The position numbers were made by a program, and so were the translations under genes. From positions 1 through 44,571 of the forward strand of contig NW_021834866.1 in NCBI RefSeq assembly GCF_006345805.1: 44,571 nucleotides of DNA. The letters run 5' to 3'. Every line of letters starts with the position of its first letter. Within the stretch, counting starts at the first letter, position 1. The stretch comes from Octopus sinensis. Lineage: Eukaryota. Below are positions 874 through 44,001 of the stretch, one piece after another. The notes beneath the pieces are model-generated. The model was not told the origin of the DNA and ran no database searches. It saw nothing but the letters and a program-made list of their open reading frames with translations.

Positions 874-918
<45 letters not shown>

Positions 919-1261: not shown

Positions 1262-1976
1262 CTCTGAAAGAAGTGTTTTTTGAGCAATAACATGTTATGT
1301 AATTATTGGTTACGGCTAATTAGAATGTTATAATTGGTTTCATGTCTACTATTGCACATAGCAACACAAGTGACTCACCCGGCCTGCTAGTTGAGGGTGC
1401 ATAACCTCTTCCCAAATGGAGGTAAAAATATAATCTTGGTCAGCTTGGTGGTGTAAAACTTCTGAAATGAAAATATTTTCAAACCGAAACTTCTTCTGGG
1501 CGTGATGGGGTCAACACCCTTTGAACAATTTCAGTTGTGTCTGAAAAGGGTAAGTTCATATACGTTTCTCTATGTTTTCCATTCAATATTCAATTATGAA
1601 TTTTCTATCATATGGGTATAGACTAAACACTTCACTTTTTGAATTTAAGAAGGCACCTAGAACAAGCAAATTTTTTAGGATCCTTGTCCTCTCGACTAAG
1701 CAAAGTTTGCACCATTCCCATTCATTGAGGTATATGGTAGGGTGGTTCTAGTAGCTTCCATTTACTCTTCTATGGTATTCCCAGTTATTTTAAACACCAA
1801 ATTTAGTTTGCCAATGCTGTAATGTTGTTCCTCTCTGGGATCCTAAATGAGAACCTGTGGTTATTTAGGCACAGCTTAAAGGGGCCCTCCATTGTTCCAA
1901 CATATTTCTGTGCATGTGACCCTACATTGTTTGTGTTGCTGCTGTTGTCTTCTTCTTTCAATCAAGACTCAGGCCA

Positions 1977-2172
1977 TTAGCCACGAAGAATAATCTCTAA
2001 GGTACTAAGAATGCGTGTGACAACTTGAAAATCCACCCACCACACGCGATAGACTGGCGGTTGCACGGGTGCGAAAGCTACATTGTTATCCTCATTCAGT
2101 AAATGGTAGCTTTTAATGGGTGGAGAGCTGAACCATCCTGGGGTACAGAGGATTCGCAATCTAGAATAGGGT
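1977..2172 (-). CDS. Candidate alternative terminal coding exon of the Srrm234 gene (R-PYSRLRILCTPGWF...LEIILRG-stop)
   Basis: Two in-frame acceptors, ctttcag|A at 2172 and ttctag|A at 2160, both match the phase-2 donor at 11165. An in-frame TAA lies just upstream (2183-2181) and the frame is open to TAA at 1979-1977. I recognise no homology and there is no expression evidence. Confidence 0.3.
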
Positions 2173-2214
2173 CTGAAAGTTTACCACACCATAGTGGGTC
2201 ACACCATGGTTCCT

Positions 2215-2422
2215 CTGCTTTGTGGCAGAAGTAGGAAGAAAGAGTGAGAGAAAGATGTGGTGAAAGAGTACAGCAGGGTTCATCCCCCACCCCTCGCTGA
2301 AGCCTCGTGGAGCTGAGGTGTTTTTGCTCAATAAACACTCACAATGCCTGATCTGGGAATTGAAACTGCGTTCTTATGACCGCAAGTCCGCTGCCCTAAC
2401 CACTGGACCATTGCGCCTCCAC
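2215..2422 (-). mobile_element. tRNA-derived SINE, family C (label used here), 5' portion
   Basis: Minus strand starts gtggaggcgcaatggtccagtggttagggcagcggac (A-box-like). The body matches copies at 8161 and 26955. Confidence 0.8.
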
Positions 2423-2812
2423 TCTGCTGCCGCTGTTGCTGTTGTTCCTGCCACTGCCATTGCTTCTGCTACCACTGGACACCACCTGTGCATCATAGAC
2501 CACAACCACATGGTTGGGCATTCAGAGCTAACCCAACATGAGCATAGCGCCTCTGTGTGCTGTTTAGGGGTGTTCACTAAAATTATTTTTACACAGGGGA
2601 CACAGCTGAGCAAGACCCTTATGTCATGTCTATTAAATAATTGCCTATAGAATTCCGCTACAGTTAAACGGTTAACAAAGCCTCTTTATGTTTGTTGAGC
2701 ATATCTGACTGAAATGTCCAAGCAGGTACAAACGAATTGAGCCATGTAGAAGTTTTAATGTAGCCACATGTTGTGTTGTGTCGTATTATGTTCTGTTCTC
2801 TCAGTTGTGCTA

Positions 2813-3047
2813 CCTATTTCTTTACTACCCACAAGGGGCTAAACACAGAGAGGACAAACAAGGACAGACAAACGAATTAAGTCGATTACATCGACCCCAG
2901 TGCGTAACTGGTACTTATTTTATCGACCCCGAAAGGATGAAAGGCAAAGTCAACCTTGGCGGAATTTGAACTCAGAACGTAGCCGCAGACGAAATACCGC
3001 TAAGAATTTCGCCTGGTGTGCTAACGTTTCTGCCAGCTCGCCGCCTT
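2813..3047 (-). mobile_element. SINE family B (label used here), single unit with head
   Basis: Reverse complement of ggcggcgagctggcagaaacgttagc...gagttcaaattcc...gtaaagaaatagg. There are many copies in the window. Confidence 0.85.
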
Positions 3048-3489
3048 ATATTCTCGTTGTGCTACCATTGAGCAAGGACTCACAAGCAGTGAATGCTCTG
3101 CTTTGCATGTTCAAACCTATCACCCTTGTTCCTTAAGAGGAAGGGGTGGGGGATACATAATGAAAATAATAAACAGAATAAAAGATTAAGCATAAAACAG
3201 CAAAATCAAATTCAAAAATAAAAAATACATAGATTAAATAAAAATAAGAATTTTAGCAACTGAAAAATTAATGTAAAAACTGAAAATTTGATTTTAAAGC
3301 AAAACATAGAAAAAGAAAAAATTAAAAATAAAAACAAATTAGAATAATGAAAAAAAAAACAACAGAAAATAAATATAAGTGAATATAGATTTTTATGATT
3401 AAAAATGAAAACAAACAATTGTCCACACAAACATACATAGACATGAGTGCACAGGTAAATTTTTAAAAATAAATTTACATATATAGATT

Positions 3490-3721
3490 GAAAGGCACAC
3501 GCACACACACACACACACACACAAACACACACATGCTCAGTCACACACAAATAAATGAACCCTCATAACAAATTACTGAAGAAAACCAACATACACGCAT
3601 TCAAACAAATATATACTTTTATATATATATATATATACACACACACATATATATATATATATACATACACAAACACACATATATATACATGCACACACAC
3701 ACACACACACATATATACATG

Positions 3722-3782
<61 letters not shown>

Positions 3783-4010
3783 ACACACATACATATATAT
3801 ACATATATATATACACATACACACATATGTATATATATATATATATACATACACATATATACATACACACACACACGCATGTGTTAATGCATACATATAT
3901 ATATATATATATATACTGATATGTGTTAATGTGTGCATGTTTGTATGTATATACATGTATATTTATATGTATATACATGTCTACACCTGCTTAATAAATC
4001 ATGGAAATAA
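3490..4010. repeat. Compound (CA)n/(TA)n microsatellite field
   Basis: Direct reading. It explains the HT/YI/VC-repeat ORFs here. Confidence 0.95.
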
Positions 4011-4049
4011 AATGAAATTCCCACACACACACACATACACAAACATCAT

Positions 4050-4455
4050 TTATCTTTTACTGGTTTCAGTCATTGGATTGCAACCATACTGGAGCACTGC
4101 CTTGCTGGGTTAACTCAAACAGATCAACCCCAATACTTATATTTTTAAGTCTGTTACTTATCCTGTCACTTTCTTTAGTTGAACTACTTAGTTATTGGAA
4201 TGCAAACAAACCAACACTGGTTGTCAAACAGTGGCAGTGGGGGACAATCATAAAGACACATACACACACACACGTGCACATATATATATATAGGCAGTGG
4301 GATTCTGCACAGTTTCCATCTACCAAATTCGCTCAAAGGCATTATTAGCCATCCTGGGCCTATAGTAGAAGATACCTGCTCAAGGTACCATGCTGTGGGA
4401 CTGAACCCAAAACTACATAACTGTAAACAAAGCTTCTTAGCTACTCGGCCAAAAC
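4050..4455 (-). mobile_element. Degenerate SINE family A copy
   Basis: Diverged match to the reverse complement of the 11361-11770 copy (ttttactggtttcagtcatt...; agtttccatctaccaaattc...; gggactgaaccc). Confidence 0.65.
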
Positions 4456-5065
4456 TGTACCTAAATGTGTGTGTGTGCGTGCATGCACATGTGTGCATGT
4501 GTAAACACACACACACATGCAAGCAAACACGCTTTAATGCAAATTATTGAAGATCAACAAAGATGCACACATGCAGAAATACACATACACACACACAAAC
4601 ACACACTCATGCAGTTGTGTACATATACACACAAATACACACGTACACATATATACTCATAATCACACACACACATACACACACACAAATACTGAAATAA
4701 ACTCCTTACAACTACAAGAAAATAAACAATTATTTTAATAATGAATAAATAAATAATTAAGAGGTTGATTAAATGATTCATTAAGACTGTATAATTTGCA
4801 GTTGATGAGATTTTTTGAGATATTTATGCATTTCTAATTTTTAAATAATTAGTGAAGATGACTATTTGGCATTGGTATTGTTATTGTTGTCAGTGATGGT
4901 GATGATGATGTCACTAAGAACCTGGGTCAGCCCTGATTCCATGTAGGTGTAATCATGGACATGCCACCCATACAACCATACAAGCATGCAAGCTTTTCTC
5001 TAGATATCTACAACTATATTGGCAAATATGTTCCTTGCATGAGAAAGTAACGCTGGAACATACAT

Positions 5066-5561
5066 AAGAGATGTACCGGACACACGAGAGGTGTACTGGA
5101 CACAGAAGATGTGTGCTGGACACAGAAGAGGTGTACTGGACACAGAAGAGGTGTACTGGACACAGAAGATGTGTGCTGGACACAGAAGAGTTGTACTGGA
5201 CACAGAGGTGTACTGGACACAGAAGTGTACTGGACACAGAAGTGTACTGGACACAGAAGTGTACTGGACACATGAGAGGTGTACTGGACACAGAAGAGGT
5301 GTGCTGGACATAGAAGAAGTGTGCTGGACACATGACAGGCATACTTGACTAACGTGAGTTGTACTGGACACATGAGAGGTTTACTGGACCCACAAGAGGT
5401 TTACTGGACAAACGTGAGGTTTACTGGACACACGAGAGCTGTACTGGACACATGAGAGGTGTACTGGACCCATGAGAGGTTTACTGGACAAACGTGAGGT
5501 TTACTGGACCCATGAGAGGTGTACTCGACCCACGAGAGGTTTACTGGACACATAAGAAGTG
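5066..5561. repeat. 20-bp minisatellite, about 25 copies (three are 17-bp variants), core gtgtactggac
   Basis: The core recurs at 5071, 5091, 5111 ... 5539 with a 20-bp period, except for 17-bp steps between 5191 and 5259. Confidence 0.95.
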
Positions 5562-6062
5562 TCAGCATGCAGCTCACTCAGAAGACAATGAAAGAGAAGA
5601 GGAGTGCACCTTTATGGTTGGAAATGAGGGTTAAGGTATGAAAGGAGGAGGAGGAGAGGGCGAGGCTGAAGAGGCTCTGTTTGCAGAGGAGTTATGTGGC
5701 TACTTGCATTTAGGGGAATGTGTGAGAATGAATCAGTTGCAACTGCAAGGAAGCTAATAGGGATGATGAGGGGCCCAGGTGGCACCACAAGAAATACCAT
5801 AACACACACACACACACATCATAATCATCATCATAATCATCATCATCATGTTTTAATGTCCATCTTCCATCATGGTATTGACTGGAAGGCTCAACAGGAT
5901 TTGATAGGTCAAAGGACTGTGCCATGATCACAGCGCACACACACACACACACATACACATATGAACCCACACATACACACACACACAATCATATATACTT
6001 ATGCATACATATATACCAAGACATGCATACACAATTATGTATATGTCAATCATTAAACACAT

Positions 6063-6100
<38 letters not shown>

Positions 6101-6292
6101 TATACAGAAATACACATGTACACATTATATCAAAAACACAAACACATACATGCACACACACACACACACACACACTATATACAGAAACACAACACACACA
6201 CACACACACATTTAAGCATACACACACACACATATACACACATATGCGCATACAATTATGTGTACATCAGTTAGTAAACACACACACATGTA

Positions 6293-6461
6293 TATCATCA
6301 TCATCGTTTAACGTCCGCTTTCCATGCTAGCATGGGTTGGACGGTTCAACTGGGGTCTGGCAAGCCTGAAGGCTGCACCAGGCCAGTCAGATCTGGCAGT
6401 GTTTCTACAGCTGGATGCCCTTCCTAACGCCAACCACTCCGAGAGTGTAGTGGGTGATTTT
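6293..6461 (-). mobile_element. SINE-like family D (label used here), 3' end with (GAT)n tail on the minus strand
   Basis: catcatcgtttaacgtccgctttccatgctagcatgggttggacgg... is the reverse complement of the 3' end of the 8950-9301 copy. Confidence 0.85.
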
Positions 6462-6888
6462 ATGTGCCACCGACACAGGTGCCAGACGAGGCTGGCAGAC
6501 GGCCACGCTCGGATGGTGTTTTTTATGTGCCACCGGCACAGGTGCCAGACGAGGCTGGCTGACGGCCACGCTCGGATGGTGTTTTTTATGTGCCACCGAC
6601 ACAGGTTGCCAGACGAGGCTGGCAGACGGCCACGCTCGGATGGTGTTTTTATGTGACCACCGACACAGGTGCCAGACGAGGCTGGCTGACGGCCACGCTC
6701 GGATGGTGTTTTTTATGTGCCACCGACACAGGTGCCAGACGAGGCTGGCAGACGGCCACGCTCGGATGGTGTTTTTTATGTGCCACCGACACAGGTGCCA
6801 GACGAGGCTGGCTGACGGCCACGCTCGGATGGTGTTTTTTATGTGCCACCGGCACAGGTGCCAGACGAGGCTGGCTGACGGCCACGCC
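6462..6888. repeat. 63-bp tandem repeat (6 full copies plus one partial) derived from an internal segment of SINE family D
   Basis: Unit atgtgccaccgacacaggtgccagacgaggctggcagacggccacgctcggatggtgtttttt starts at 6462, 6525, 6588, 6651, 6715, 6778 and 6841. Its reverse complement resembles 9043-9090. Confidence 0.95.
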
Positions 6889-7489
6889 GTATATATACTA
6901 TATACAAAAACACGCCGTATATATACTATATACAGAAACACAAACATACATTTATGCATACATACACATATACATGCACAATTATGTGTATATCAATCAC
7001 TAAACACACACACACACACACATACACACACACACACATACACACACACACATACACACACACACACATATGCACAGATAAGCATCAAAACTTTGCACTA
7101 GATATACATATATCATGCCAGAATACGAGTGGACACCAGGTCCCATAAGCCATCTGACCCGCTGACCTTTGGTCACTTACAAAGACACATCAATAATAGT
7201 TTAATAAGCTGTACAAAATGCTTTGATTTATAGCCAGATCTGTAGCATTGCCAAGATATAGATTTGTGCTTGTGAGTTTCTGCATAAAGGGGCAGAGTGT
7301 GTGTGTGTATTTGTGTGTGCAAGTGTGTGTGTGTGTATTTGTGTGTGCATACATATGTATAAGTATAAATGATGATGATGTGCGTGTATATAGATATATG
7401 TATGTCTATATAATTATCATTTAATGTCAATTTTCCTTGCTGCCATGGCTAGAAAGTTGTGCACAAACACATTCATTTATAGTGTGTGT

Positions 7490-7490
7490 G

Positions 7491-7522
<32 letters not shown>

Positions 7523-8150
7523 TATATATACAGGCATACATATATAAATATATACATTCATGTGTGTGTTTGTGTATGTATATATATATATATATATATA
7601 ATACACACACACATACACACATATTTATATACAGGCATACATATATAAATATATACATTCATGTGTGTGTTTGTGTATGTATATATATATATATAAATAC
7701 ACACACACATACACACATATTTATATACAGGCATACATATATAAATATATACATTCATGTGTGTGTTTGTGTATGTATATATATATATATAAATACACAC
7801 ACACATACACACAATTTTATATACAGGCATACATATATAAATATATACTTCATGTGTGTGTTTGTGTATGTATATATATATATAGAAATACAACACACAC
7901 ATACACACATATTTATATACAGGCATACATATAAATATATACATTCATGTGTGTGTTTGTGTATGTATATATATATATATATAAATACACACACACATAC
8001 ACACATATATATACAGGCATACATATATAAATATATACATTCATGTGTGTGTTTGTGTATGTATATATATATATATATATAAATACACACACACATACAC
8101 ACATATTTATATACAGGCATACATATATAAATATATACATTCATGTGTTT
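7490..8150. repeat. About 96-bp tandem repeat of a composite microsatellite, 7 copies
   Basis: Marker caggcatac at 7531, 7632, 7728, 7824, 7920, 8014 and 8114. Confidence 0.9.
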
Positions 8151-8160
8151 GTGTGTGTGT

Positions 8161-8464
8161 GTGGAGGCACATGCCTAGTGGTTAGAGCAGCGGACTCGCA
8201 GTCGAGGGATCGCGGGTTCGAATCTTAGACCGGGCGATGTGTGTGCTTATGAGCAAAACGCCTAAGCTCCACGCGGCTCCGGCAAAAGGTAATGGCAAAC
8301 TTCTGCTGACTCTTTTGCCACAACTTTCTCTCACTCTTTCCTCCTGCATCTTGCAGCTCACCTGCGATAGACTGGCGTCCTATCCAGGTGGGGAACCTAT
8401 ACGCCAAGGAAACCGGGAAACTGGCCCTTATGAGCCAGGCACGGCTCGAGAAGGAACAAACAAC
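8161..8464 (+). mobile_element. tRNA-derived SINE, family C variant
   Basis: A-box-like tgcctagtggt and B-box gggttcgaatc, followed by a non-tRNA body shared with 2215-2422. Confidence 0.85.
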
Positions 8465-8779
8465 ATGTATATATATATATATGTATGAAGCTTCTTTGGA
8501 GAAATGGTTAAAACATAAGAGGATACACATTTTTTATCATCATCACCATTGTCATCATCATGGGTCACATGAAGTTTACTGAGGCCGTGTTTCTATCCGC
8601 AGATGCTTTTCCTGTTGCCAACCTTCAACTGCTTCCTAGCCCAGTTAATATTTACTCGTGTCTAGATGTGCTTCTGTGTTTGAAATTTTAAGGTGATATG
8701 AGGGACTCTCCCATTGTTAGACACTGTATGAGGGTTCAACAGGTGCAATGGGTGCCACATGTCAGATGTCAAAATGATC

Positions 8780-8890
8780 GCAGAGCAACGTGAAATGGAG
8801 TGCTTTGCTCAAGAACACAATGCAATGCCTGCTCTGGGAATTGAACCCACAATCTCACAATCAGAAGTGCAACCCCTAACCACCAAGAGA
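8780..8890 (-). mobile_element. tRNA-like SINE head fragment related to 40380-40620
   Basis: Shares gtg.tttgctcaagaacacaa followed by a reversed B-box (gggaattgaaccc). Confidence 0.6.
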
Positions 8891-8949
8891 TATGCACATT
8901 CCCATATATATATATATATATATATAATATATATATATTCACTTTGGAT

Positions 8950-9301
8950 TGTAGGGCGACCTGTTGTGCTTGAGGAGACCTATTGAGTCAAGTACATCAA
9001 CATCAAAATACAAATCAAACAGAAGTTGTAGCTGTGATACCTGTGCCGGTGGCACGTAAAAAGCACCATCCGAACGTGGCCAATGCCAGCGCTGCCTTGA
9101 CTGGCTTCCATGCTGGTGACACGTAAAATGGACCCACTACACGCATGTTGTAGTTGGTGTTAGGAAGGGCATCCAGCTGTAGAAACACTGCCAGATCAGA
9201 CTGGAGCCTGGTGCAGCCTCCTGGCTTCCCAGACCCAGGTCAAACTGTCCAACCCATGCTAGCATGGAAAACGGACGTTAAACGATGATGATGATGATGA
9301 T
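8950..9301 (+). mobile_element. SINE-like family D, sense orientation, (GAT)n tail
   Basis: ...gtgccggtggcacgtaaaaagcacc...aggaagggcatccagctgtagaaac...acggacgttaaacgatgatgatg. Confidence 0.85.
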
Positions 9302-10024
9302 ATATTGGAAGCAGATACAGCATGTAAAAGAGAATACTATGTTGGTTTAGACACGTGATGTGTATGAATGATGACAGCTGTATAAAGTGCTGATCGCTTA
9401 AAGTGGATGACACCTGTGGAAGAGGGAGACTCCGGAAGACATAGGATTAAGTAGTGAGGACTGAATTCAAGATTTTGGGCCTCATGGAGGAGATGACACT
9501 GGGCCATGATTTCTGGGGATACAAGGTTCTTCAACACCTGCCCACCTCAGTGAAACTGAGTTCTGGAAGTGCAATGTGCCACACCCACAGGTAACATAAG
9601 ACTTTTCATACACTGTGCCCAAATAAACCAAACTACATCTCTTCCCTTCCTCCTCCTCATGTTCCCTTTTCCCTTGCATTATACTTATCCCTCCCCCTCC
9701 ACTCCTGCTGCCCAATCCTGTCCCCCCTGCACTGCCAAGTGTATCGTTCCAATACTGTTGTGCCTAGGTTTCGCCAATCACTGCATCCCCACTTCTCACC
9801 CTACTTTTTTGCATTCACATGAACTCCCTACTCATGTGTCCTCAGCCCTGAGAGTATTCCCTAGCACATTGCCTCCATCCCTCTCGATTCTCTCATCTTT
9901 GCTCCCTCCCTCCCTCACACTCTCCACCTGCCACCTGTTGCTGTCCTTCTGTTGTACTCCAAACTCATCTCCTGGCACGAAGCCACTTCCTCCAGTACCC
10001 ACCCCTCTCAAAGGACGTTTGTCT

Positions 10025-10320
10025 TGCAAGTTGCTTGGTAAAAAAACATTCACTCATCCACTCAGTAAAGTGGTTGCTCTTTGGAAAGGCATCCAGCTGT
10101 AAAAACCATGCCAAAAAAGACATCACTAGTGCTGGTGCCACATAAAGAAGCACCGAATCCACTCTGTATAGTGGTTGGCATTATGAAGGACATCAAGTCA
10201 GAAGAACCATGTCAAAATAGACTCCAGAACATGCTGCAGTCCTCTGGTTTGTCAATTCCTGGCAAGCCATACAACCCATGACAGCATGGAAGCTGGCTGT
10301 TAACTGATGATCATGATCTA
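10025..10320 (+). mobile_element. Degenerate SINE family D copy
   Basis: Retains ggaaaggcatccagctgtaaaaaccatgcc and acaacccatgacagcatggaa. Confidence 0.6.
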
Positions 10321-10419
10321 TAAACATATATGCATATATAAGCATAGAAACTCTAAACACATAGGCTTCTGTATATATATCTGTGTGAGTGTGTGAATAT
10401 ACATATATATATACATGTT

Positions 10420-10683
10420 ATAAACATCTATATGCATATTTGCACGTGTATATATATGCATAGAAACTATAAATATACATGCATGTGTGTGTGTATATAT
10501 ATATATATATCTTTGAGTGTGAATATATGTATATATATATATATAAACATCTATACAAATATTTAATGTATATAGAAGCTATATACATAAATGCATATAA
10601 TTACATATATATATATATACACATATATAAACTAATGTGCATATATTCATACATGTATATGCATAAATTAGTTAGATACATGG

Positions 10684-10721
<38 letters not shown>

Positions 10722-10726
10722 GTATG

Positions 10727-10759
<33 letters not shown>

Positions 10760-10890
10760 GTATGTATATATATATATATATATATGTATGTATATATATA
10801 TATATATTATGTATGTATATATATATATATATATGTATGTATATATATATATATAAGCTATATACATATGTGCATATATTTATGTATATA
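10420..10890. repeat. (TA)n-rich microsatellite field
   Basis: Direct reading. Confidence 0.95.
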
Positions 10891-11099
10891 CTGAAACTCC
10901 TGAAAATATAAATGGCAATAAATGGAAAAGTCTAGAATCCTATAAAGAATCTCAGAAAAAAAAGAGTGAAATAAAATAGATTTCTTCAAAATTTTTATGC
11001 TAACAACAACAACAACAACCACAACAACAATGGAAACAACAAAAGCAGCAACGACAACAACAACAACAAAAACTATTGTCATGACAACAGTTAAGTGGC

Positions 11100-11154
11100 T
11101 AAAAAAGACAACAACAACATCAACATGGACTGGAAATTTTAATATAAAGTGTTA
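11100..11154 (-). terminator. Candidate intronic polyadenylation site directly after the eMIC-N exon
   Basis: Minus strand: read-through stop TAA at 11154-11152, ATTAAA at 11143-11138, CA at 11127-11126, then GU/U-rich tgttgatgttgttgttgtctttttt. Confidence 0.4.
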
Positions 11155-11164
11155 TGGGCCATAC

Positions 11165-11311
11165 CTCGTGATTCTTCGTTTATCAAGATGGCTTGGTGAG
11201 CCTGGTCGCCGTCGAATGGAAGGGCTGCGAGATTCTCTCCTCCTGGAGCCTCGGCTCTGACTTCGGCTGTAATCACGACCATGGCTGTGTGATCGGCTCG
11301 GACTTAAGCGC
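11165..11311 (-). CDS. Srrm234: 147-nt RS-rich exon encoding the N-terminal half of the eMIC domain (RLSPSRSHSHGRDYSRSQSRGSRRRESRSPSIRRRPGSPSHLDKRRIT)
   Basis: Acceptor is a T-tract then atatatcaacag|G; donor is AG|gtatgg; phase 2 at both ends and in frame with the 25452-25868 exon. SPSHLxxRRIT matches the SRRM3/SRRM4 eMIC motif (human SRRM4 RRRDSPSHLEARRITSARKRPIPY, from recall). Confidence 0.9.
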
Positions 11312-11360
11312 CTGTTGATATATAAAAAAAAAAAACGTACAGTATATAAATTAAAAAAAA

Positions 11361-11770
11361 GGCGCAGGAGTGGCTGTGTGGTAAGTAGCTTGCTAACCAA
11401 GCCACATGGTTCCGGGTTCAGTCCCACTGCGTGGCATCTTGGGTAAGTGTCTTCTGCTATAGCCCCGGGCCGACCAATGCCTTGTGAGTGGATTTGGTAG
11501 ACGGAAACTGAAAGAAGCCTGTCGTATATATGTATATATATATGTATGTGTGAGTGTGTTTGTGTGTCTGTGTTTGTCCCCCTAGCAATGCTTGACAACC
11601 GATGCTGGTGTGTTTATGTCCCCGTCACTTAGTGGTTCGGCAAAAGAGAACGATAGAATAAGTACTGGGCTTACAAAGAATAAGTCCCGGGGTCGATTTG
11701 CTCGACTAAAGGCGGTGCTCCAGCATGGCCGCAGTCAAATGATTGAAACAAGTAAAAGAGTAAAAGAGTA
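11361..11770 (+). mobile_element. Full-length tRNA-derived SINE family A
   Basis: Head ggcgcaggagtggctgtgtggt with B-box-like gggttcagtcc, internal TA/TG microsatellite, tail gtaaaagagtaaaagag. Multiple copies in the window. Confidence 0.9.
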
Positions 11771-11856
11771 CAGAGTTATGGGAACTGTTGTTCTAAGCAG
11801 AGTAAATATTAACAGCTTTGTGTGTGTGTGTGTGAAGATTTTCTAAGGATAATACG

Positions 11857-12429
11857 GGGAACTGGCAGAAATGTTAGCATACCGGGCAAAATGATTAGCG
11901 GTATTTCGTCCGCCACTGCATTCTGAGTTCAAATTCCGCCGAGGTCGACTTTGCCTTTCATCCTTTCAAGGTCGATTAAATAAGTACCAGTTATGCACTG
12001 GGGTCGATATAATCGACTTAATCTGTTTGTCTGTCCTTGTTTGTCCCCTCTGTGTGTAGCCCCTTGTGGGCAGTAAAGAAATAGGTATTTCGTCTGCCGC
12101 TACGTTGTAGGTTCAAATTCTGCCGAGGTTGACTTTGCCTTTCATCCTTTCGGGGTCAATTAAATAAGTACCAGTTATGCACTGGGGTCGATATAATCGA
12201 CTTAATCCGTTTGTCTGTCCTTGTTTGTCCCCTCTGTGTGTAGCCCCTTGTGGGTAGTAAAGAAATAGGTATTTCGTCTGTCATTATGTTCTATGTTCAA
12301 ATTCCACCGAGGTCAAGTTTACCTTTCATCCTTTTGGGGTCAATAAAGTACTGATTGCATACTGGGGTCGATCTAATCGACTGGCCCCCTTCCCCAAAAT
12401 TTCGGGCCTTGTGCCTAGAGTAGAAAAGA
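11857..12429 (+). mobile_element. SINE family B, head plus three tandem 184-bp units
   Basis: ggtatttcgtc recurs at 11900, 12084 and 12268. The third unit ends in a different tail (ccccttccccaaaatttcgggccttgtgcctagag). Confidence 0.9.
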
Positions 12430-12713
12430 CTATTTGGTATTCTAACAAAACATCCATGTTAAGTTGGATATAATGATTACCTTTTGGTACTAATACTTTC
12501 TCCATCACAAATAATTAATTTTTAATAAACCTGCCAGCCATCTGCAATATCAGTGTCTTAAAAGATGCTGATATTTTATATATCTTAGCAGCAAGGTTTG
12601 ACTGGCATGTAGTGACCGGATGCTCTCCACTGATGATATCTAGTAGAATGAAATCACATGATATGGGAGTTCCAGCACCTATGGCAGATGGTTCTCATCT
12701 ATGATATGTGTAT

Positions 12714-15342
12714 AGAAACCAGATGCCTATGTAGAAACCAAGTGCCTATTTAGAAACCAGATGCCTATTTAGAAACCAGATGCCTATGTAGGAACCAAGT
12801 GCCTATTTAGAAACCAGATGCCTATTTAGAAACCAGATGCCTATGTAGAAACCAAGTGCCTATTTAGAAACCAGATGCCTATTTAGAAACCAGATGCCTA
12901 TTTAGAAACCAGATGCCTATGTAGAAACCAAGTGCCTATTTAGAAACCAGATGCCTATTTAGAAACCAAGTGCCTATTTAGAAACCAGATGCCTATGTAG
13001 AAACCAGTGCCTATTTAGAAACCAGATGCCTATTTAGAAACCAGATGCCTATGTAGAAACCAAGTGCCTATTTAGAAACCAGATGCCTATTTAGAAACCA
13101 GATGCCTATGTAGAAACCAAGTGCCTATTTAGAAACCAGATGCCTATTTAGAAACCAGATGCCTATGTAGAAACCAAGTGCCTATTTAGAAACCAGATGC
13201 CTATTTAGAAACCAGATGCCTATTTAGAAACCAAGAGCCTATTTAGAAACCAGATGCCTATTTAAAAACCAGATGCCTATTTAGAAACCAAGAGCCTATT
13301 TAGAAACCAGATGCCTATTTAGAAACCAGATGCCTATGTAGAAACCAAGTGCCTATTTAGAAACCAGATGCCTATTTAGAAACCAGATGCCTATGTAGAA
13401 ACCAAGTGCCTATTTAGAAACCAGATGCCTATTTAGAAACCAGATGCCTATGTAGAAACCAAGTGCCTATTTAGAAACCAGATGCCTATTTAGAAACCAG
13501 ATGCCTATGTAGAAACCAAGTGCCTATTTAGAAACCAGATGCCTATGTAGAAACCAAGTGCCTATTTAGAAACCAGATGCCTATTTAGAAACCAGATGCC
13601 TATTTAGAAACCAAGAGCCTATTCAGACACCAAATGCTTATTTAGAAACCAAATGCCTATTTAGAAACCAGATGCCTATTTAGAAACCAAGAGCCTATTC
13701 AGACACCAAATGCTTATTTAGAAACCAGATGCCTATGTAGAAACCAAGTGCCTATTTAGAAACCAGATGCCTATTTAGAAACCAGATGCCTATGTAGAAA
13801 CCAAGTGCCTATTTAGAAACCAGATGCCTATTTAGAAACCAGATGCCTATTTAGAAACCAAGAGCCTATTCAGACACCAAATGCTTATTTAGAAACCAAA
13901 TGCCTATGTAGAAACCAAGTGCCTATTTAGAAACCAGATGCCTATTTAGAAACCAGATGCCTATTTAGAAACCAAGAGCCTATTCAGACACCAAATGCTT
14001 ATTTAGAAACCAGATGCCTATGTAGAAACCAAGTGCCTATTAGAAACCAGATGCCTATTTAGAACCAGATGCCTATGTAGAAACAAGTGCCTATTTAGAA
14101 CCAGATGCCTATTTAGAAACCAGATGCCTATGTAAAACCAAGTGCCTATTTAGAAACCAGATGCCTATTTAGAAACCAGATGCCTATGTAGAAACCAAGT
14201 GCCTTTTAGAAACCAATGCCTATTTAGAAACCAGATGCCTATTTAGAAACCAAGAGCCTATTCAGACACCAAATGCTTATTTAGAAACCAGATGCCTATG
14301 TAGAACCAAGTGCCTATTTAGAAACCAGATGCCTATTTAGAAACCAGATGCCTATGTAGAACCAAGTGCCTATTTAGAAACCAGATGCCTATTTAGAAAC
14401 CAGATGCCTATGTAGAAACCAAGTGCCTATTTAGAAACCAGATGCCTATTTAGAAACCAGATGCCTATTTAGAAACCAGATGCCTATTTAGAAACCAGAT
14501 GCCTATTTAGAAACCAAGAGCCTATTCAGACACCAAATGCTTATTTAGAAACCAAATGCCTATGTAGAAACCAAGTGCCTATTTAGAAACCAGATACCTA
14601 TTTAGAAACCAGATGCCTATGTAGAAACCAAGTGCCTATTTAGAAACCAGATGCCTATTTAGAAACCAGATGCCTATGTAGAAACCAAGTGCCTATTTAG
14701 AAACCAGATGCCTATTTAGAAACCAGATGCCTATGTAGAAACCAAGTGCCTATTTAGAAACCAGATGCCTATTTAGAAACCAGATGCCTATTTAGAAACC
14801 AAGAGCCTATTCAGACACCAAATGCTTATTTAGAAACCAAATGCCTATGTAGAAACCAAGTGCCTATTTAGAAACCAGATGCCTATTTAGAAACCAGATG
14901 CCTATGTAGAAACCAAGTGCCTATTTAGAAACCAGATGCCTATTTAGAAACCAGATGCCTATGTAGAAACCAAGTGCCTATTTAGAAACCAGATGCCTAT
15001 TTAGAAACCAGATGCCTATGTAGAAACCAAGTGCCTATTTAGAAACCAGATGCCTATTTAGAACCAGATGCCTATGTAAAACCAAGTGCCTATTTAGAAA
15101 CCAGATGCCTATTTAGAAACCAGATGCCTATGTAGAAACCAAGTGCCTATTTAGAAACCAGATGCCTATTTAGAAACCAGATGCCTATGTAGAAACCAAG
15201 TGCCTATTTAGAAACCAGATGCCTATTTAGAAACCAGATGCCTATGTAGAAACCAAGTGCCTATTTAGAAACCAAATGCCTATGTAGAAACCAAGAGCCT
15301 ATTCAGACACCAAATGCTTATTTAGAAACCAAATGCCTATGT
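12714..15342. repeat. 19-bp satellite array, about 138 units, with a 57-bp higher-order trimer
   Basis: Units agaaaccagatgcctattt, agaaaccagatgcctatgt and agaaaccaagtgcctattt alternate regularly. A variant doublet (...aagagcctattc agacaccaaatgcttattt) recurs 8 times. Confidence 0.98.
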
Positions 15343-16032
15343 GTGGGGATCTTTCAGGGCTCAAAATGCAGTATTTGACTTGCTAAGAAGTGAGTTGGAT
15401 ATAAAGATTATCTCTTGGTATTGATATTGCTTCCATCACAAATAATATATAGACACACACACACACACACATACACACACACATATACATTTTCTTTTTA
15501 CTATTTACTTTTTATTTGTTTCTGTCATCATCTTATACGTCCTTACATCATAAGAATACGAATTTAGAAACTTCAAGAGAACAGGAAATAATTTGTTCGA
15601 TAAATGCAGAACTCAAAGTAGATAAAGCTATAAATAATATTTACATACTATCATTTATAGCCTTATCTCCTTCAAGTTCTAGTTATATAATGAAATATAC
15701 ATACATATATATATATATATATAGATAGATTATATAGATAGATAGATATTTATATATCAAACAGACAGGAGCAGACATAATTAATAGTTAAATCTGATGA
15801 TAATGAGCCAATTAGTTTGAGGTGACTTTTAATGGTTTTGAAACTATTATTAACATAAACTGATTCTGTGCTATTTTAGTATTCATAATCATCATCATCG
15901 TTTCCATGTCAGCTGCTTCGGGCTTACAAGGGTCAGGCAAGAATATGTTGGTGCGGAGTTGTCTATGGCTGTATGCTCTTCCAGTTGCCTACTGTGATGT
16001 ATTTCTATGCGAGATAATATTCTACTGGTGTA

Positions 16033-16068
<36 letters not shown>

Positions 16069-16199
16069 TATATTATATATAAAGCTGAAGTTGTTTGTGT
16101 ATTGCAGGTTTGGTAGCCTACAACTAACACTATCTCCTCCGAGACCCTGCGGTGCAAGTTGACCAAAATTGAGAGTATGATAGAAGAAGGCTTGCTCTT

Positions 16200-16460
16200 C
16201 CTTCCGTAGAAGAAAAAACTCAAATCAAACCATATTAACATCAAAAATTATTTACATCAAAAAGGTGATTTTTTTCTATGAAAATCTCGATTTTTAACGG
16301 TTTTTTGACTGCTGTGTTGCCACTTTTCGGTGTATTTCAACCAGAAAAATGTTCACTTAAAGAGAATAACAAGCTACATAATGCAAAATTTTGACTTTTA
16401 AAAAATTCCAATTCTAAAGGGTTGAAACAAACCCGAGCAATGCCGAGCGATACTGCTAGT
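16200..16460 (+). mobile_element. Possible non-autonomous Helitron 3' end
   Basis: Ends in GC-rich cccgagcaatgccgagcg followed by CTAG (16456-16459) and T, the Helitron 3' signature. The hairpin is imperfect and the 5' end was not identified. Confidence 0.4.
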
Positions 16461-16712
16461 ATATATATATAATTCCTAGAGAGTTAGAGGTTGTGAATCC
16501 AACCAACTAAGGGATAATATCTATCCAATGTATATTGGATAGATATATTGCTGGTAGAATACCCAATTAGTAATACACAAGTGTTTTTTCACTGCATGGT
16601 AATTACACTACTGAATGTAATAAATGGGTGAAGGTAAAGAGTTATTTTAACCCTAATTTATACGGCAATAAGAAAATGGAGGGGATCAATAGGTGGTATT
16701 CATCAACATATA

Positions 16713-16880
16713 TACGATGGGCTTCTTTCAGTTTCCGTCTACCAAATTCACTCACAAGGCTTTGGTCGGCCCGGGGCTATAGTAGAAGACACTTGCCCAA
16801 GGTGTGCTATGCAGTGGGAATGAACCCAGAACCATGTGGTTGGTAAGCAAGCTACTTACCACACAGCCACTTCTGTGCCT
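16713..16880 (-). mobile_element. SINE family A, 5' half
   Basis: Reverse complement of the head of the 11361 copy. Confidence 0.85.
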
Positions 16881-16999
16881 AAATAAGAAATGCAATTTTG
16901 AATTACGTGGGATTTGAACACAGAATGTTAACAGAAGAATTACCATAAAGCATTTTTGTCCAACTTTAACGATTCTGCCAATGTGCAAGGGGATACATG

Positions 17000-17222
17000 T
17001 ATATATACATACATAAATATATACATACATACATACATATATATATGTAAGTATGTATATGTGTATGTATATATAAATATATATATGTCTACATATACAT
17101 GCATATACATATAAATATATACACACACACTTCAATTTAGATAGATATATTATTCAAATATACATTTATGTTTATACATTTAAGTATACTCACACACACA
17201 CATATATATACACACATACACA

Positions 17223-17256
<34 letters not shown>

Positions 17257-17331
17257 CATACATATATATATATACATGCATATATATATATAAATACATA
17301 TATATATAAATACATATATATATATATACAT

Positions 17332-17372
<41 letters not shown>

Positions 17373-17447
17373 CATACATATATATATATATATACATACA
17401 TATATTTATACATACATATATATATATATACATACATATATATATAC

Positions 17448-17484
<37 letters not shown>

Positions 17485-17550
17485 TATACACACATACACA
17501 CACACATATATATATATACATGTATGTATGCGTATATATATATATATTCA
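17000..17550. repeat. Long (TA)n/(CATA)n microsatellite field; similar fields at 17870-18640, 31140-31520 and 36060-36950
   Basis: Direct reading. Confidence 0.95.
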
Positions 17551-17880
17551 ACAGACCAGAAGCAGTTTGCAAAGTTAATGAGCACCATGAAGAAAGCCTC
17601 ATCATAATGGCTGCCAGCCCTCCCCCCCCCCCGACAGACTCGATCTCCCAACTGTTTTATAGTCCAAGCTCGATGCTATGGTTTTATTTCAAGTTATATT
17701 TCAACTTTTACAATACACTTTTGGGTTTTAGTTTTCAAAAACTAAAACTTCTTTTCACTTTTTTATGACAAAATTGCAAATTTGTGCAATAACATTTTCA
17801 AATAACGACATATATTTGTCTCTCTTTCGAAATTTCTGTGTCTTTTTCTGATTCTCAATCTTGTCGCTATTATATATATA

Positions 17881-17911
<31 letters not shown>

Positions 17912-18126
17912 GATATACACAAACATATATACACACCTACACTTATACATATGTGTAGTTGTGTGTATATTTGAACGCGTATTTTATATATATATTGCAC
18001 TTAGATAATTATGCACATATATCGTATATATATATATATATATACATATATGATATTATATGTGTGTATGTGTTTGTAAGTATATGTATGCATGTATATA
18101 TAAGTGTATATATATATGTATGTCAA

Positions 18127-18163
<37 letters not shown>

Positions 18164-18207
18164 AATTTGAGCTTGTATGTAAATGTCTGTGTGGGTATAT
18201 ATGTACA

Positions 18208-18245
<38 letters not shown>

Positions 18246-18315
18246 CACACGCACGCAAATATGTATTCATAGTAAATGCATACACACATATATCTATACA
18301 TAAAATGTATATTTA

Positions 18316-18357
<42 letters not shown>

Positions 18358-18580
18358 ATTTACATACCTATAGAAATATACACATACATACCTTTGCGCA
18401 TGAATGTATATATGCATGTGACGCAGCTCTCTATGCATTCACACATGTATACATTCTAAAATATGAAACAGAAAGCATTTCGTTGGGTTCTTTGACATAC
18501 ATAGCAGGTAACCTGTTCATTCAGAATTGATCAACATCATATACACACACACACTTGATGCTGCTGGATCTCTCTTCATC

Positions 18581-18632
<52 letters not shown>

Positions 18633-18635
<3 letters not shown>

Positions 18636-19052
18636 TTTCTCTTTTATTTGTTTCAGTCAGTTGACTGCGGCTATGCTGGAGCACCGCCTTTAGTCGAGCA
18701 AATCGACCCCGGGACTTATTCTTTCTAAGCCCAGTACTTATTCTATCAGTCTCTTTTGCCGAACCGCTAAGTGACGGGGATGTAAACACTCCAACATCGG
18801 TTGTCAAGCAATGCTAGGGGGACAAACACAGACACACAAACATATACACACACACTTATATATATATATATATATATATATACGACAGGCTTCTTTCAGT
18901 TTCCGTCTACCAAATCCACTCACAAGGCATTGGTCGGCCCGGGGCTATAGCAGAAGACACTTGTCCAAGATGCCACGCAGTGGGACTGAACCCGGAACCA
19001 TGTGGTTGGTAAGCAAGCTACTTACCACACAGCCACTCCAGCCACTCCTGCG
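18633..19052 (-). mobile_element. Full-length SINE family A
   Basis: High similarity to the reverse complement of 11361-11770 along its whole length. Confidence 0.9.
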
Positions 19053-19123
19053 ATTAATTAGCTTTTTTTTAATTGCATTGATTGTGAATGTACAATTGTA
19101 CTTTGTTATACTGAGTATACATA

Positions 19124-19330
19124 TTAACCCTATAGCATTTAAACCAGTGATATCTGGCCAAAATAAACTGCTTGTTTTACTTTCAAGCTGGTCAGATCTG
19201 ATTTCTCACACCTACCCTACAATATCGTTCTAAAAAAATTAACAGTTGCCTCATCAAAATCTCAAAGTGCAAGATTAATTCAAAGCAATGCGAACAAATA
19301 AGCATCACTATTTGACAGAATAATTATTTC
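19124..19330 (-). mobile_element. TTAA-bounded (piggyBac-type) MITE copy
   Basis: Starts ttaaccctatagcattt. The interior is the reverse complement of the two copies at 25905-26337. Confidence 0.6.
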
Positions 19331-19334
19331 TACT

Positions 19335-19730
19335 CTAGGCACAAGACCTTGAAAATTTGGCGGGAAGGGGGAATTCGATCACATCGGCCTCAGTGCATAA
19401 CTGGTACTTATTTTATCGACCCCCAAAAGGATGAAAGGCAAAGACGATCACAGCAGAATGTAGTGGCAGACAAAATGCTGCTAAGCATTTCACCCGGCAT
19501 GCTAACATTTCTTATTTGTTCATTGTCCACAAGGGGCCAAACACAGAGGGGACAAACAAGGACAGACAAACGGATTAAGTCGATTACATCGACCCCAGTG
19601 CGTAACTGGTACTTAATTTATCGACCCCGAAAGGATGAAAGGCAAAGTTGACCTCAATGGAATTTGAACTCACAACGTAACGGCAGACGAAATACCTATT
19701 TCTTTACTACCCACAAGGGGCTAAACTTTG
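19335..19730 (-). mobile_element. SINE family B, several tandem or partial units
   Basis: Repeated ggtactta..ttatcgacccc.aaaggatgaaaggcaaag blocks. Confidence 0.85.
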
Positions 19731-20863
19731 TCCATGTTTGGAATGAGAAGGAGAAGTATTTTAACTGCTTGGATACAGGTGAGTGTTGGCAACAGGAAGA
19801 GCACACTGCTGTAGGACATCTGCTGCAACGGCTTTGCTTTGATTAAGCAAGGATGGAAATGTCAATGTTATAAATGACGATGTTACATTTGTAGAAATGT
19901 TCATTAACTCAAGCTTAAGCCACCAATGTGATTGATCAAGAGATGCATCTTAATTAAAAGTTTAATAAAAAAATTGAAAAATGATTAGGGAATAATTGCT
20001 GGTGTACAGCACTGTCTTGAGTATATTGAAAACTTCTGTATGATCTAAGGAGAAGCTGTGTTCATTTCTATCTTGTTCCTTTTAATTCACCCAGTTTGAT
20101 TCCACAATTAAAGTTTGAGAGCTAAAATTTGTTTTTGTGAAGACATAGAGACATTATCTCTGCTCTTTCATTAATGTTTCAGTTTTGGGGATTGTAATCT
20201 GATGATTTTCCAAAAAAGGAATATTTGCCTACTTCCATATGCAAAGTGTTGCATGCTTATTAATTTACCAGTGTATATCTAAATGGTCCATACACCATTC
20301 TCTCAAGTTCCAATACGTACCTTGACGATGTCTCTTCCTAAATGTGAAACGATGTTGGAGGATACGTCTTTAGAATTTTCTCTCTTCCTTCATAATTACA
20401 TAACATCGTTTTCCTTTCTAGGTACTCGTCAGGATATTGCCTTCACTTCATAAATAATTACTTTGCTTAAACATTTAACCAATTAACGAACAGAACTGAC
20501 TGATTGACAAACCTAGCTGACTGGTTAATCAATGGAATGATTAATCAAACAATTAGTTAATTGGTTAAATGGTTAGTTGATTAATAATAATAAAATAATA
20601 ATAAAAACGTGTGTGGTTATTATTGGCATAACTCCTCTCCCAAGATTTGACAAAATATCATTATTTGCTTCATCATCAAAGTCTTGACAGTGATTCTTCC
20701 ATAATTGTATGGCTAATTCCTTTATTTATTTCAGTCAATTTACTATGGCCATGCTAGAGCACCACCTTAAATTTGTTAAAGCAGAACTTCTAAGGCTGGA
20801 TGCAATTTCTGTCAGTAACCCTCACCTATTTCTAAGCAAGAATAATATTTCATTATGGCCATA

Positions 20864-21265
20864 GACACAGGAGTGGCTGTGTGGTAAGTAGCTTGCTTAC
20901 CAACCACATGGTTCCGGGTTCAGTCCCACTGCATGGCACTTTGGACAAGTGTCTTCTACTATAGCCTCGGGCCGACCAAAGCCTTGTGAGTGGATTTGGT
21001 AGACGGAAACCGGAAGAAGCCCGTCGTATATATGTATATATGTGTGTGTGTATGTATATGTTTGTGTGTCTGTGTTTGTTCCCCCAACGTCACTTGACAA
21101 ACGATGATGGTCTGTTTATGTCCCCGTAACTTAGCGGTTCGGCAAAAGAGACCGATAGAATAAGTACTAGGCTTACAAAGAATAACTCCTGGGGTCAATT
21201 TGCTCAACTAAAGGTGGTGCTCCAGCAGGGCCACAGTCAAATGACTGAAACAAGTAAAAGAGTAG
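20864..21265 (+). mobile_element. Full-length SINE family A
   Basis: Matches 11361-11770 from head to gtaaaagag tail. Confidence 0.9.
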
Positions 21266-21339
21266 ATGTTATTATCCCGCACAGATGGATTGCTTCATTG
21301 ATGGCATATCTAAAAATCCATAACTACCCCTAGCAAGTT

Positions 21340-24560: not shown

Positions 24561-24649
24561 CTATTTTCCTTAGTCATTGCACGGTGATTGCTTTAAGTTT
24601 TAAGCTTTTACAGGATCATAAATTTTTACAGAATATTTATATTCTGTTG

Positions 24650-37722: not shown

Positions 37723-37765
<43 letters not shown>

Positions 37766-43955: not shown

Positions 43956-44001
<46 letters not shown>

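What the first reader, a model, noticed from the sequence alone, without database searches (positions are those of the whole stretch)
11165..11311. eMIC half-domain exon identifies the locus as the neural microexon regulator Srrm234
Seen: a canonical 147-nt exon ending RRRPGSPSHLDKRRIT plus a split AG codon, in frame with an upstream RS exon. Established: SRRM3/4 and bilaterian Srrm234 carry the eMIC motif SPSHLxxRRITSARKRPIPY, which drives neural microexon inclusion and is switched on by alternative 3' end processing in non-vertebrates. If the next exon starts with T or C, AG becomes Ser and the motif continues. I found no SARKRP-coding segment in 1-11164, so the completing exon should be more than 11 kb downstream, left of the window. 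The domain itself is known; its exact 3' architecture here is the part worth checking.
Basis: partly seen in the sequence, partly recalled or inferred. Interest (0 to 1): 0.8.

Follow-up and report, generated by a model that had tools for sequence, protein, structure and literature searches.

The report
First eMIC exon of an Srrm234 gene
This is a real 147-base coding exon, on the minus strand, that encodes the first part of the known eMIC domain of the splicing regulator Srrm234 in a lophotrochozoan, probably a mollusc; it is an ordinary ortholog, and the exons that complete or replace the domain lie outside the window.

Summary
Window 11311..11165 (minus strand) is a 147-nt exon with a good acceptor (T-run...CAG|G) and a GT donor (GAG|GTATGG). 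It encodes RLSPSRSHSHGRDYSRSQSRGSRRRESRSPSIRRRPGSPSHLDKRRIT plus a split AG.

On its own it passes Pfam SRRM_C (PF15230) at 34.7 bits (cut-off 27), covering profile positions 13-56 of 67. It is 77-88% identical to mollusc Srrm234 orthologs. One of these is Haliotis asinina XP_067651420.1, which carries an N-terminal cwf21 domain. The exon joins in frame to an upstream RS exon (25868..25452) that aligns colinearly with the Haliotis protein.

The phase-2 intron after RRIT-AG is at the same place in five other protostome loci. An annelid and a snail also have a proximal non-eMIC RS-tail exon between the two halves, the Drosophila-type layout.

Neither the eMIC second half, nor an RS-tail exon, nor cwf21 is in the window. 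The 3' architecture here therefore cannot be resolved. The terminal intron is over 11.16 kb, against 50 nt to 5.9 kb in the comparators. This is a known gene family and a known mechanism, so interest is low.

The parts
11165..11311 (-). First eMIC-encoding exon (147 nt, phase 2/2). It encodes RLSPSRSHSHGRDYSRSQSRGSRRRESRSPSIRRRPGSPSHLDKRRIT plus a split AG codon.
   Evidence: Sequence and translation. Pfam SRRM_C 34.7 bits, profile positions 13-56 of 67. 77-88% identity to mollusc orthologs. Alignment A1.
11159..11167 (-). Shared 5' splice site, GAG|GTATGG. It sits in phase 2 inside the Ser codon that follows RRIT. This is the decision point between eMIC and non-eMIC C-termini.
   Evidence: The same intron position and phase occur in L001, L003, L004, L005, L006 and L002. 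[quoted passage not shown]
11312..11345 (-). 3' splice site of the exon: a T-run and pyrimidine tract ending in caacAG.
25452..25868 (-). Upstream Arg/Ser-rich exon (417 nt, phase 2/2), in frame with the eMIC exon. The donor at 25452 is inferred; in-phase AG|GTCA alternatives exist a few codons upstream.
   Evidence: tblastn to Haliotis P0008 residues 303-461, E = 6e-17. The non-RS part aligns to P0008 321-361, 53% identity, E = 2e-4 with composition adjustment.
11312..25451 (-). Intron of 14,140 nt between the RS exon and the eMIC exon, unless an undetected small exon lies inside it. It is rich in SINE-like repeats and microsatellites.
   Evidence: No further RS-rich or homologous coding segment was found.
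1..11164 (-). The first 11,164 nt of the intron downstream of the shared donor. It holds no eMIC second half and no RS-tail alternative exon, and is mostly tandem and interspersed repeats.
11152..11164 (-). Read-through tail if the donor is not used: AG+G TAT GGC CCA TAA, giving ...RRIT-RYGP-stop. The product would be truncated and lack the ARKRPxPY half.
   Evidence: Relatives read RRITR-stop at the same place.
11138..11143 (-). Speculative: an ATTAAA hexamer 22 nt after the donor, followed by CA and a (TGT)n/T-rich run. It is a candidate intronic poly(A) signal.
   Evidence: There is no expression evidence, and the GT-rich run is a microsatellite.

Best explanation
Window 11311..11165 (minus strand) is the penultimate-type coding exon of the single-copy-type bilaterian gene Srrm234. 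This gene is the ortholog of vertebrate SRRM2/3/4 and Drosophila CG7971. The source is a lophotrochozoan, probably a mollusc, with long repeat-rich introns.

**What the exon encodes.** It encodes the last stretch of the Arg/Ser-rich region and the first roughly two thirds of the eMIC domain (...RSPSIRRRxGSPSHLDKRRIT). It ends two bases into a Ser codon.

**How it most likely works.** The 5' splice site at 11165/11164 is a shared donor.
- Joined to a distal exon beginning C/T-GCN-CGN-AAR-CGN-CCN (S-ARKRPVPYYRPSP...), it completes the eMIC domain. That form is the only one active in promoting neural microexon inclusion.
- Joined to a proximal exon beginning with a purine (Arg, then an RS-rich tail and a stop), or not spliced at all (RRIT-RYGP-stop), it yields a general Srrm234 isoform without eMIC activity.

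**Shown here:** the exon, its frame, its family, the conserved intron position and phase, and both kinds of C-terminus in relatives.

**Inferred:** that the same two alternatives exist downstream of this window's left edge, and that the choice is neural-specific.
For: - Exon anatomy and frame.
- Pfam SRRM_C above its gathering score for the exon alone.
- Only four hits in 1.84 billion representatives. The best is Haliotis asinina XP_067651420.1 (cwf21 + RS + RRIT).
- Colinear match of both window exons to that protein.
- Among the 127 proteins collected, 37 carry the SPS[HF]L..RRIT motif. After RRIT they continue either with SARKRP[VI]PY or with an RS-rich tail, including two isoforms of one Haliotis gene (X2 eMIC, X4 non-eMIC).
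- Same phase-2 intron in annelid, oyster, snail and two compact metagenomic eukaryote contigs. The eMIC exon starts with C/T in all five.
- Proximal RS-tail ORF between the halves in Paralvinella and Lymnaea.
- Drosophila mechanism, and the requirement for the complete domain: PMC8797185.
Against: - The second half of the eMIC domain, any RS-tail exon and the cwf21 exons are all absent from the 44.6-kb window. The gene is identified from two exons only.
- An intron over 11.16 kb between the eMIC halves is longer than in any comparator (50 nt to 5.87 kb).
- No transcript data were available, so exon use, tissue specificity and the 3' ends are untested.
- No protein from the source species or a close relative turned up in the protein searches.
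Confidence: 0.9

Rival explanations
1. In this species the exon is mainly a composite terminal exon. Cleavage and polyadenylation at the ATTAAA 22 nt after the donor would give an ...RRITRYGP-stop protein. The eMIC switch would then be splicing against intronic polyadenylation right at the donor, rather than, or in addition to, a choice between two downstream last exons.
For: - ATTAAA at 11143, a CA about 12 nt later, then a GT/T-rich run.
- The donor GTATGG departs from consensus at +4 and +6.
- No RS-tail exon within 11 kb.
- No AATAAA on the sense strand for 15.5 kb.
Against: - ATTAAA is frequent in this AT-rich intron (10 in 11 kb).
- The GT-rich run is a microsatellite.
- No PAS sits in the equivalent position in Paralvinella or Lymnaea.
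- There is no expression evidence.
Confidence: 0.12
2. The locus is a decayed or truncated copy: a pseudogene, a partial duplicate, or a lineage that lost the second eMIC half. No completing exon would then exist downstream.
For: The second half and cwf21 were not found in the window. No annotated ortholog from a close relative was recovered.
Against: - Both exons have open frames, matching phases and intact canonical GT-AG splice sites.
- The eMIC half is 100% conserved over RRRESRSPSIRRR and GSPSHLDKRRIT relative to other molluscs. That argues for purifying selection.
- The neighbouring intron is 14 kb, so over 11 kb is unremarkable here.
Confidence: 0.05
3. It is a chance RS-rich open frame, or an exon of another RS protein such as SRRM1, PPIG/NKTR or CLASRP.
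For: RS-rich sequence is low-complexity and attracts spurious matches. The first homolog search was saturated with RS proteins.
Against: - The match lies in the non-repetitive motif SPSIRRRxGSPSHLDKRRIT.
- It passes Pfam's curated cut-off.
- It hits only Srrm234-type proteins in an exhaustive HMMER scan.
- The exon boundary coincides with a conserved intron.
Confidence: 0.01

Closest known systems
Drosophila melanogaster Srrm234 (CG7971) 3' end: first eMIC-encoding exon with a common donor, a proximal non-eMIC exon (pA1, or poison exon) and a distal eMIC exon (pA2) (PMC8797185)
   Same: - The eMIC domain is split by an intron after RRIT.
- The first half sits on a constitutive-type exon with a shared donor.
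- The full domain is required for activity.
   Different: - Neither downstream alternative is visible here; at least 11.16 kb of repeat-rich intron follows the donor.
- The motif is the lophotrochozoan SPSHL form, not the arthropod SPSFL form.
- Regulation by Elav/Fne is untested.
Mollusc Srrm234 orthologs annotated as 'SRRM2-like' or 'SRRM4': Haliotis asinina isoforms X2 (eMIC) and X4 (RS tail), Lymnaea stagnalis, Saccostrea echinata, Pomacea, Biomphalaria, Aplysia
   Same: - 77-89% identity over the exon.
- Identical core RRRESRSPSIRRRxGSPSHLDKRRIT.
- Same exon phase, and nearly the same exon size: 144 nt in Saccostrea and L002 against 147 nt here.
- Colinear upstream RS region.
   Different: - The intron after the exon is 0.44 kb in Saccostrea and 5.87 kb in Lymnaea, but over 11.16 kb here.
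- Read-through gives R-stop there and RYGP-stop here.
- The N-terminal part of the exon (RLSPSRSHSHGRDYSRSQSRG) is species-specific.
Paralvinella palmiformis (annelid) locus LSH36_12g10009 (L001)
   Same: Same split, AG|C-GCT-CGC-AAA-CGT-CCT. A proximal RS-tail ORF lies between the halves.
   Different: The layout is compact: a 2.84-kb intron with many AATAAA hexamers. The submitted gene model stops at RRITR and places the eMIC exon in a separate model.
Vertebrate SRRM3 / SRRM4 (Pfam SRRM_C, PF15230)
   Same: Same domain family, and the same proposed biochemical role in enhancing microexon inclusion.
   Different: In vertebrates the neural restriction is transcriptional, through separate paralogs. 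In non-vertebrates it is post-transcriptional, within one gene.

Membership tests
Srrm234 / eMIC-bearing SRRM proteins (Pfam SRRM_C, PF15230) | Sequence match to the SRRM_C profile at or above Pfam's gathering score | tested here: met
   The exon peptide alone scores 34.7 bits against a cut-off of 27, E = 2.7e-8, profile positions 13-56 of 67.
Srrm234 / eMIC-bearing SRRM proteins (Pfam SRRM_C, PF15230) | Complete eMIC domain, including the second half (S)ARKRP[IV]PY | tested here: inconclusive
   Absent from all six frames of the window. The gene runs off the left edge of the window. All five comparator loci have it on the next eMIC exon.
Srrm234 / eMIC-bearing SRRM proteins (Pfam SRRM_C, PF15230) | Conserved phase-2 intron after RRIT-AG, with a shared donor | tested here: met
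   GAG|GTATGG at 11165/11164. Same position and phase in L001-L006. Drosophila common donor.
Srrm234 / eMIC-bearing SRRM proteins (Pfam SRRM_C, PF15230) | N-terminal cwf21 domain (PF08312) in the same gene | tested here: inconclusive
   tblastn with the Paralvinella and Haliotis N-termini finds no cwf21 in 25.9-44.6 kb. The proteins that best match both window exons do carry cwf21. Upstream exons would lie beyond position 44571.
Srrm234 / eMIC-bearing SRRM proteins (Pfam SRRM_C, PF15230) | Arg/Ser-rich region immediately upstream, colinear with orthologs | tested here: met
   Exon 25868..25452 aligns to Haliotis P0008 303-461. Its non-RS part aligns to 321-361, E = 2e-4.
Srrm234 / eMIC-bearing SRRM proteins (Pfam SRRM_C, PF15230) | Alternative last exons (non-eMIC against eMIC) with neural-specific choice, and microexon-enhancing activity | not testable with these tools
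   No transcript data are available, and the alternative exons are not in the window.
Other RS proteins (SRRM1, PPIG/NKTR, CLASRP) | Best homologs belong to these families, or carry their domains (PWI, cyclophilin) | tested here: not met
   An exhaustive HMMER scan returns only Srrm234-type proteins or fragments. Pfam gives only SRRM_C.

The most novel reading that the evidence does not exclude
In this large-genome lophotrochozoan, the eMIC on/off switch may be built differently from the fly, annelid and snail layout. The first 11 kb after the shared donor holds no proximal RS-tail exon. The sense strand has no AATAAA for 15.5 kb. An ATTAAA with a GT-rich element sits 22 nt after a sub-consensus donor. 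The non-eMIC isoform could therefore be made by intronic polyadenylation at the donor itself (RRITRYGP-stop), competing with very long-range splicing to a distant eMIC exon.
Probability: 0.1. Interest if true: 0.35.

Novelty: new member of a known kind. Interest (0 to 1): 0.15.

Why it matters
The exon marks the locus of the master regulator of neural microexons in a lophotrochozoan with a large genome. That is useful for annotation. Automatic gene models in relatives often stop at RRITR or split the eMIC exon into a separate gene, as in Paralvinella. It also marks the splice donor whose usage would report eMIC expression in RNA-seq.

It adds no new biology. The domain, its split by an intron, and the alternative 3' processing are published for Drosophila. 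They are also visible in RefSeq isoforms of other molluscs.

Tried and rejected
- A homolog search with the exon plus a canonical second half returned one candidate and no hit. That search was wasted.
- The first homolog search was saturated by RS-repeat proteins and gave only 7 hits.
- Haliotis isoforms X2 and X4 could not be located on their genome, because only the longest product of a gene is indexed. The closest mollusc architecture therefore came from Lymnaea and Saccostrea.
- An exact look-up of read-through ORFs of the window found nothing. The source species could not be identified and the scaffold could not be extended.
- No cephalopod protein appeared in the top 120 relatives. My impression that the SINE-like repeat and microsatellite load look cephalopod is from memory and untested.
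- The 2019 Nat Ecol Evol paper that defined the eMIC domain is not held. Literature searches for eMIC in octopus, molluscs or lophotrochozoans found nothing relevant.
- Aragorn and Rfam found nothing in the window. Pfam found nothing meaningful in other long ORFs.
- A dinucleotide-shuffle test timed out and was replaced by a first-order Markov expectation.
- One tblastn run used an invalid option and was repeated.
- I did not try to nominate alternative acceptors in 1..11164. Without transcripts or conservation, any AG would give some short ORF.

Full report
**1. The observation**

Read on the minus strand, window 11311..11165 is 147 nt. It is flanked by a long T-run and pyrimidine tract ending ...caacAG| and by |GTATGGCC. 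Only frame +1 is open. It gives one leading base (G), then RLSPSRSHSHGRDYSRSQSRGSRRRESRSPSIRRRPGSPSHLDKRRIT, then a split AG.

The only other Arg/Ser-rich coding segment in the window is on the same strand at 25868..25452. It is 417 nt, with acceptor cttccAG|G and donor CGAAG|GTTAGA. It ends with AG, so AG+G makes Arg and the two exons join in frame. Both are phase 2/2. The donor of the upstream exon is my inference, because in-phase AG|GTCA sites exist a few codons earlier.

**2. It is not chance**

- The 49-residue peptide alone passes Pfam SRRM_C (PF15230): 34.7 bits against a curated cut-off of 27, E = 2.7e-8, profile positions 13-56 of 67.
- An exhaustive HMMER scan of 1.84 billion representative proteins returned only four hits at E <= 0.001.
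- The best hit (E = 2.3e-7, 83% identity) is XP_067651420.1, 'serine/arginine repetitive matrix protein 2-like isoform X4' of the gastropod Haliotis asinina. It has an N-terminal cwf21 domain, an RS region and ...SPSHLDKRRIT.
- Searched back against the window, that protein hits exactly this exon (E = 4e-18, 77% identity) and the upstream exon (residues 303-461, E = 6e-17) in colinear order.
- The non-repetitive part of the upstream exon still aligns with composition correction: 53% identity over 47 residues, E = 2e-4.
- Other RS families (SRRM1, PPIG/NKTR, CLASRP) do not appear.

**3. What relatives show about the junction**

Among the 127 proteins collected, 37 carry SPS[HF]L..RRIT. After RRIT they fall into three classes.

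- *The eMIC form.* It continues SARKRP[VI]PY... It is seen in Haliotis X2, Lymnaea, Saccostrea, Solemya, Mytilus, Aplysia, sea urchin, crinoid, aphids and springtail.
- *A non-eMIC RS-rich tail.* It begins with R. It is seen in Haliotis X4, Pomacea X3, Biomphalaria X3, horseshoe crab, sea cucumber and several unnamed assemblies.
- *Models that stop at RRITR or RRITRY.* These are a read-through of AG|GTAA or AG|GTGA into the intron.

I fetched five genomic loci:

| Locus | Source |
|---|---|
| L001 | Paralvinella palmiformis (annelid) |
| L005 | Saccostrea echinata (oyster) |
| L006 | Lymnaea stagnalis (snail) |
| L003, L004 | two compact eukaryotic contigs from metagenomes |

In all five, the exon ends ...AT[CAT] AC[NC] AG|GT, and the eMIC-completing exon begins AG|C or AG|T followed by GCN-CGN/AGA-AAR-.... 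The intron position is conserved across protostomes.

A sixth contig, L002 (Logan SRR13616525), shows the same exon of 144 nt with no DNA similarity to the window.

The exon is 147 nt in the window, 144 nt in Saccostrea and L002, 153 nt in Paralvinella and 237 nt in Lymnaea, always in phase 2/2.

**4. Architecture in relatives against the window**

The intron between the two eMIC halves has these lengths:

| Locus | Intron length |
|---|---|
| L004 | 50 nt |
| L003 | 52 nt |
| Saccostrea | 439 nt |
| Paralvinella | 2,843 nt |
| Lymnaea | 5,869 nt |

In Paralvinella and Lymnaea an ORF lies between the halves. It is preceded by an AG, starts with a purine (AG+A or AG+G = Arg), encodes an RS-rich tail and ends in a stop. 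In Paralvinella it is RSTSRDRRHSYSRSRSPHSRSHH... In Lymnaea it is RSRSSSRSRKYRSYSRSYSRS....

This is the layout published for Drosophila. [quoted passage not shown] Neural choice depends on Elav/Fne, and only the complete eMIC is active (PMC8797185).

In the window, the 11,164 nt after the donor contain neither element.

- No ARKRP-like motif, under relaxed patterns, occurs in any frame.
- No 24-residue RS-rich stretch occurs.
- tblastn finds nothing with ten tails and three second halves from relatives.

The region is largely tandem repeats, microsatellites and SINE-like copies. The intron upstream of the exon is already 14.1 kb, so a downstream intron over 11 kb fits the local scale. It is still the longest among the loci examined. 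cwf21 exons are likewise not in the 18.6 kb upstream of the RS exon.

**5. How it most likely works**

*Shown:* the exon supplies eMIC profile positions 13-56 and stops inside a Ser codon at a conserved shared donor.

*Inferred from relatives and from the Drosophila work:*
- Splicing to a distal C/T-initial exon completes the domain. This gives the microexon-enhancing isoform, reported to act through U2AF and SF1 contacts.
- Splicing to a purine-initial RS-tail exon, or failure to splice (here RRIT-RYGP-stop), gives an isoform with an incomplete, inactive eMIC.

Tissue specificity is untested here.

**6. A minor variant not excluded**

- An ATTAAA lies 22 nt after the donor, followed by CA and a (TGT)n/T-run.
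- The donor GTATGG is sub-consensus.
- The sense strand has no AATAAA from position 15510 down to 1, against 25 on the other strand.
- A first-order Markov model expects 4.8 in 1..11164 (P about 0.008) and 7.5 in 1..15510 (P about 5e-4, for a region chosen post hoc). ATTAAA is not depleted.

This could mean intronic polyadenylation at the donor, plus selection against premature canonical sites in a very long intron. It could equally be T-over-A skew plus repeats. I give it about 10%.

**7. Comparison, novelty and verdict**

The locus behaves as, and by every feature testable in the window is, a member of the Srrm234/eMIC family. Three things remain untested only because they fall outside the window or need transcripts: the second eMIC half, cwf21, and alternative last-exon use.

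No protein from the source species or a near relative was found. The signature SPSHL, and 81-88% identity to mollusc sequences, place it in Lophotrochozoa, probably Mollusca. My suspicion of a cephalopod rests on memory of the repeat type and is unverified.

The family, the domain, the split and the switch are all known, so this is a new member of a known kind and of low interest. The one part it flagged as worth checking, the exact 3' architecture, cannot be settled from this window.

Noticed in passing
window 1..15510, minus (sense) strand: There is no AATAAA hexamer on the sense strand, against 25 on the plus strand. A Markov-1 model expects 4.8 in 1..11164 and 7.5 in 1..15510. ATTAAA is not depleted. 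This may reflect selection against premature polyadenylation in a long intron, or simply T>A skew and repeats.
   Followed up: partly
window 11100..11143, minus strand: An ATTAAA lies 22 nt after the exon's donor, followed by CA and a (TGT)n/T-rich run. This is a poly(A)-site-like arrangement that would give an RRITRYGP-stop isoform.
   Followed up: partly
window 11341..11600 (-), 4219..4408, 16706..16880, 18799..19042, 20868..21100, 27748..27899, 28163..28376, 37571..37745, 39405..39558, 43797..44021, 44472..44571: About eleven copies of a SINE-like repeat of roughly 240 nt, 73-93% identical to each other. One ends about 30 nt upstream of the eMIC exon's acceptor. Aragorn and Rfam do not recognise it.
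   Followed up: partly
window 28955..29956: A strongly strand-asymmetric purine-rich (plus strand) satellite, with GC skew 0.76 and AT skew 0.62. It creates long spurious K/E/R-rich and S/F/L-rich ORFs and attracts false RS/KE matches in tblastn.
   Followed up: no
window 5067..5552, 6458..6887, 7491..8162: Three tandem arrays inside the downstream intron: 20 nt x 25, 63 nt x 6.8 (96% matches) and 96 nt x 6.9.
   Followed up: no
L001 29788..32198 (Paralvinella palmiformis GCA_025642065.1): The submitted annotation ends the Srrm234 model at RRITR. It also calls a separate 158-aa gene that contains the proximal RS-tail ORF and the eMIC-completing exon. This is probably a split gene model.
   Followed up: partly
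proteins P0038 (Dreissena polymorpha) and P0111 (Plakobranchus ocellatus): These gene models carry in-frame insertions of 11 and 30 residues between RRIT and SARKRP. They may be poison or alternative exon inclusion, or prediction artefacts.
   Followed up: no
L003 and L004 (ENA metagenome contigs ERZ17174854, ERZ908233): Compact eukaryotic Srrm234 loci with only 50-52 nt between the eMIC halves and no room for a proximal alternative exon. In these organisms the switch, if any, must work differently, for example by intron retention giving RRITR-stop.
   Followed up: no
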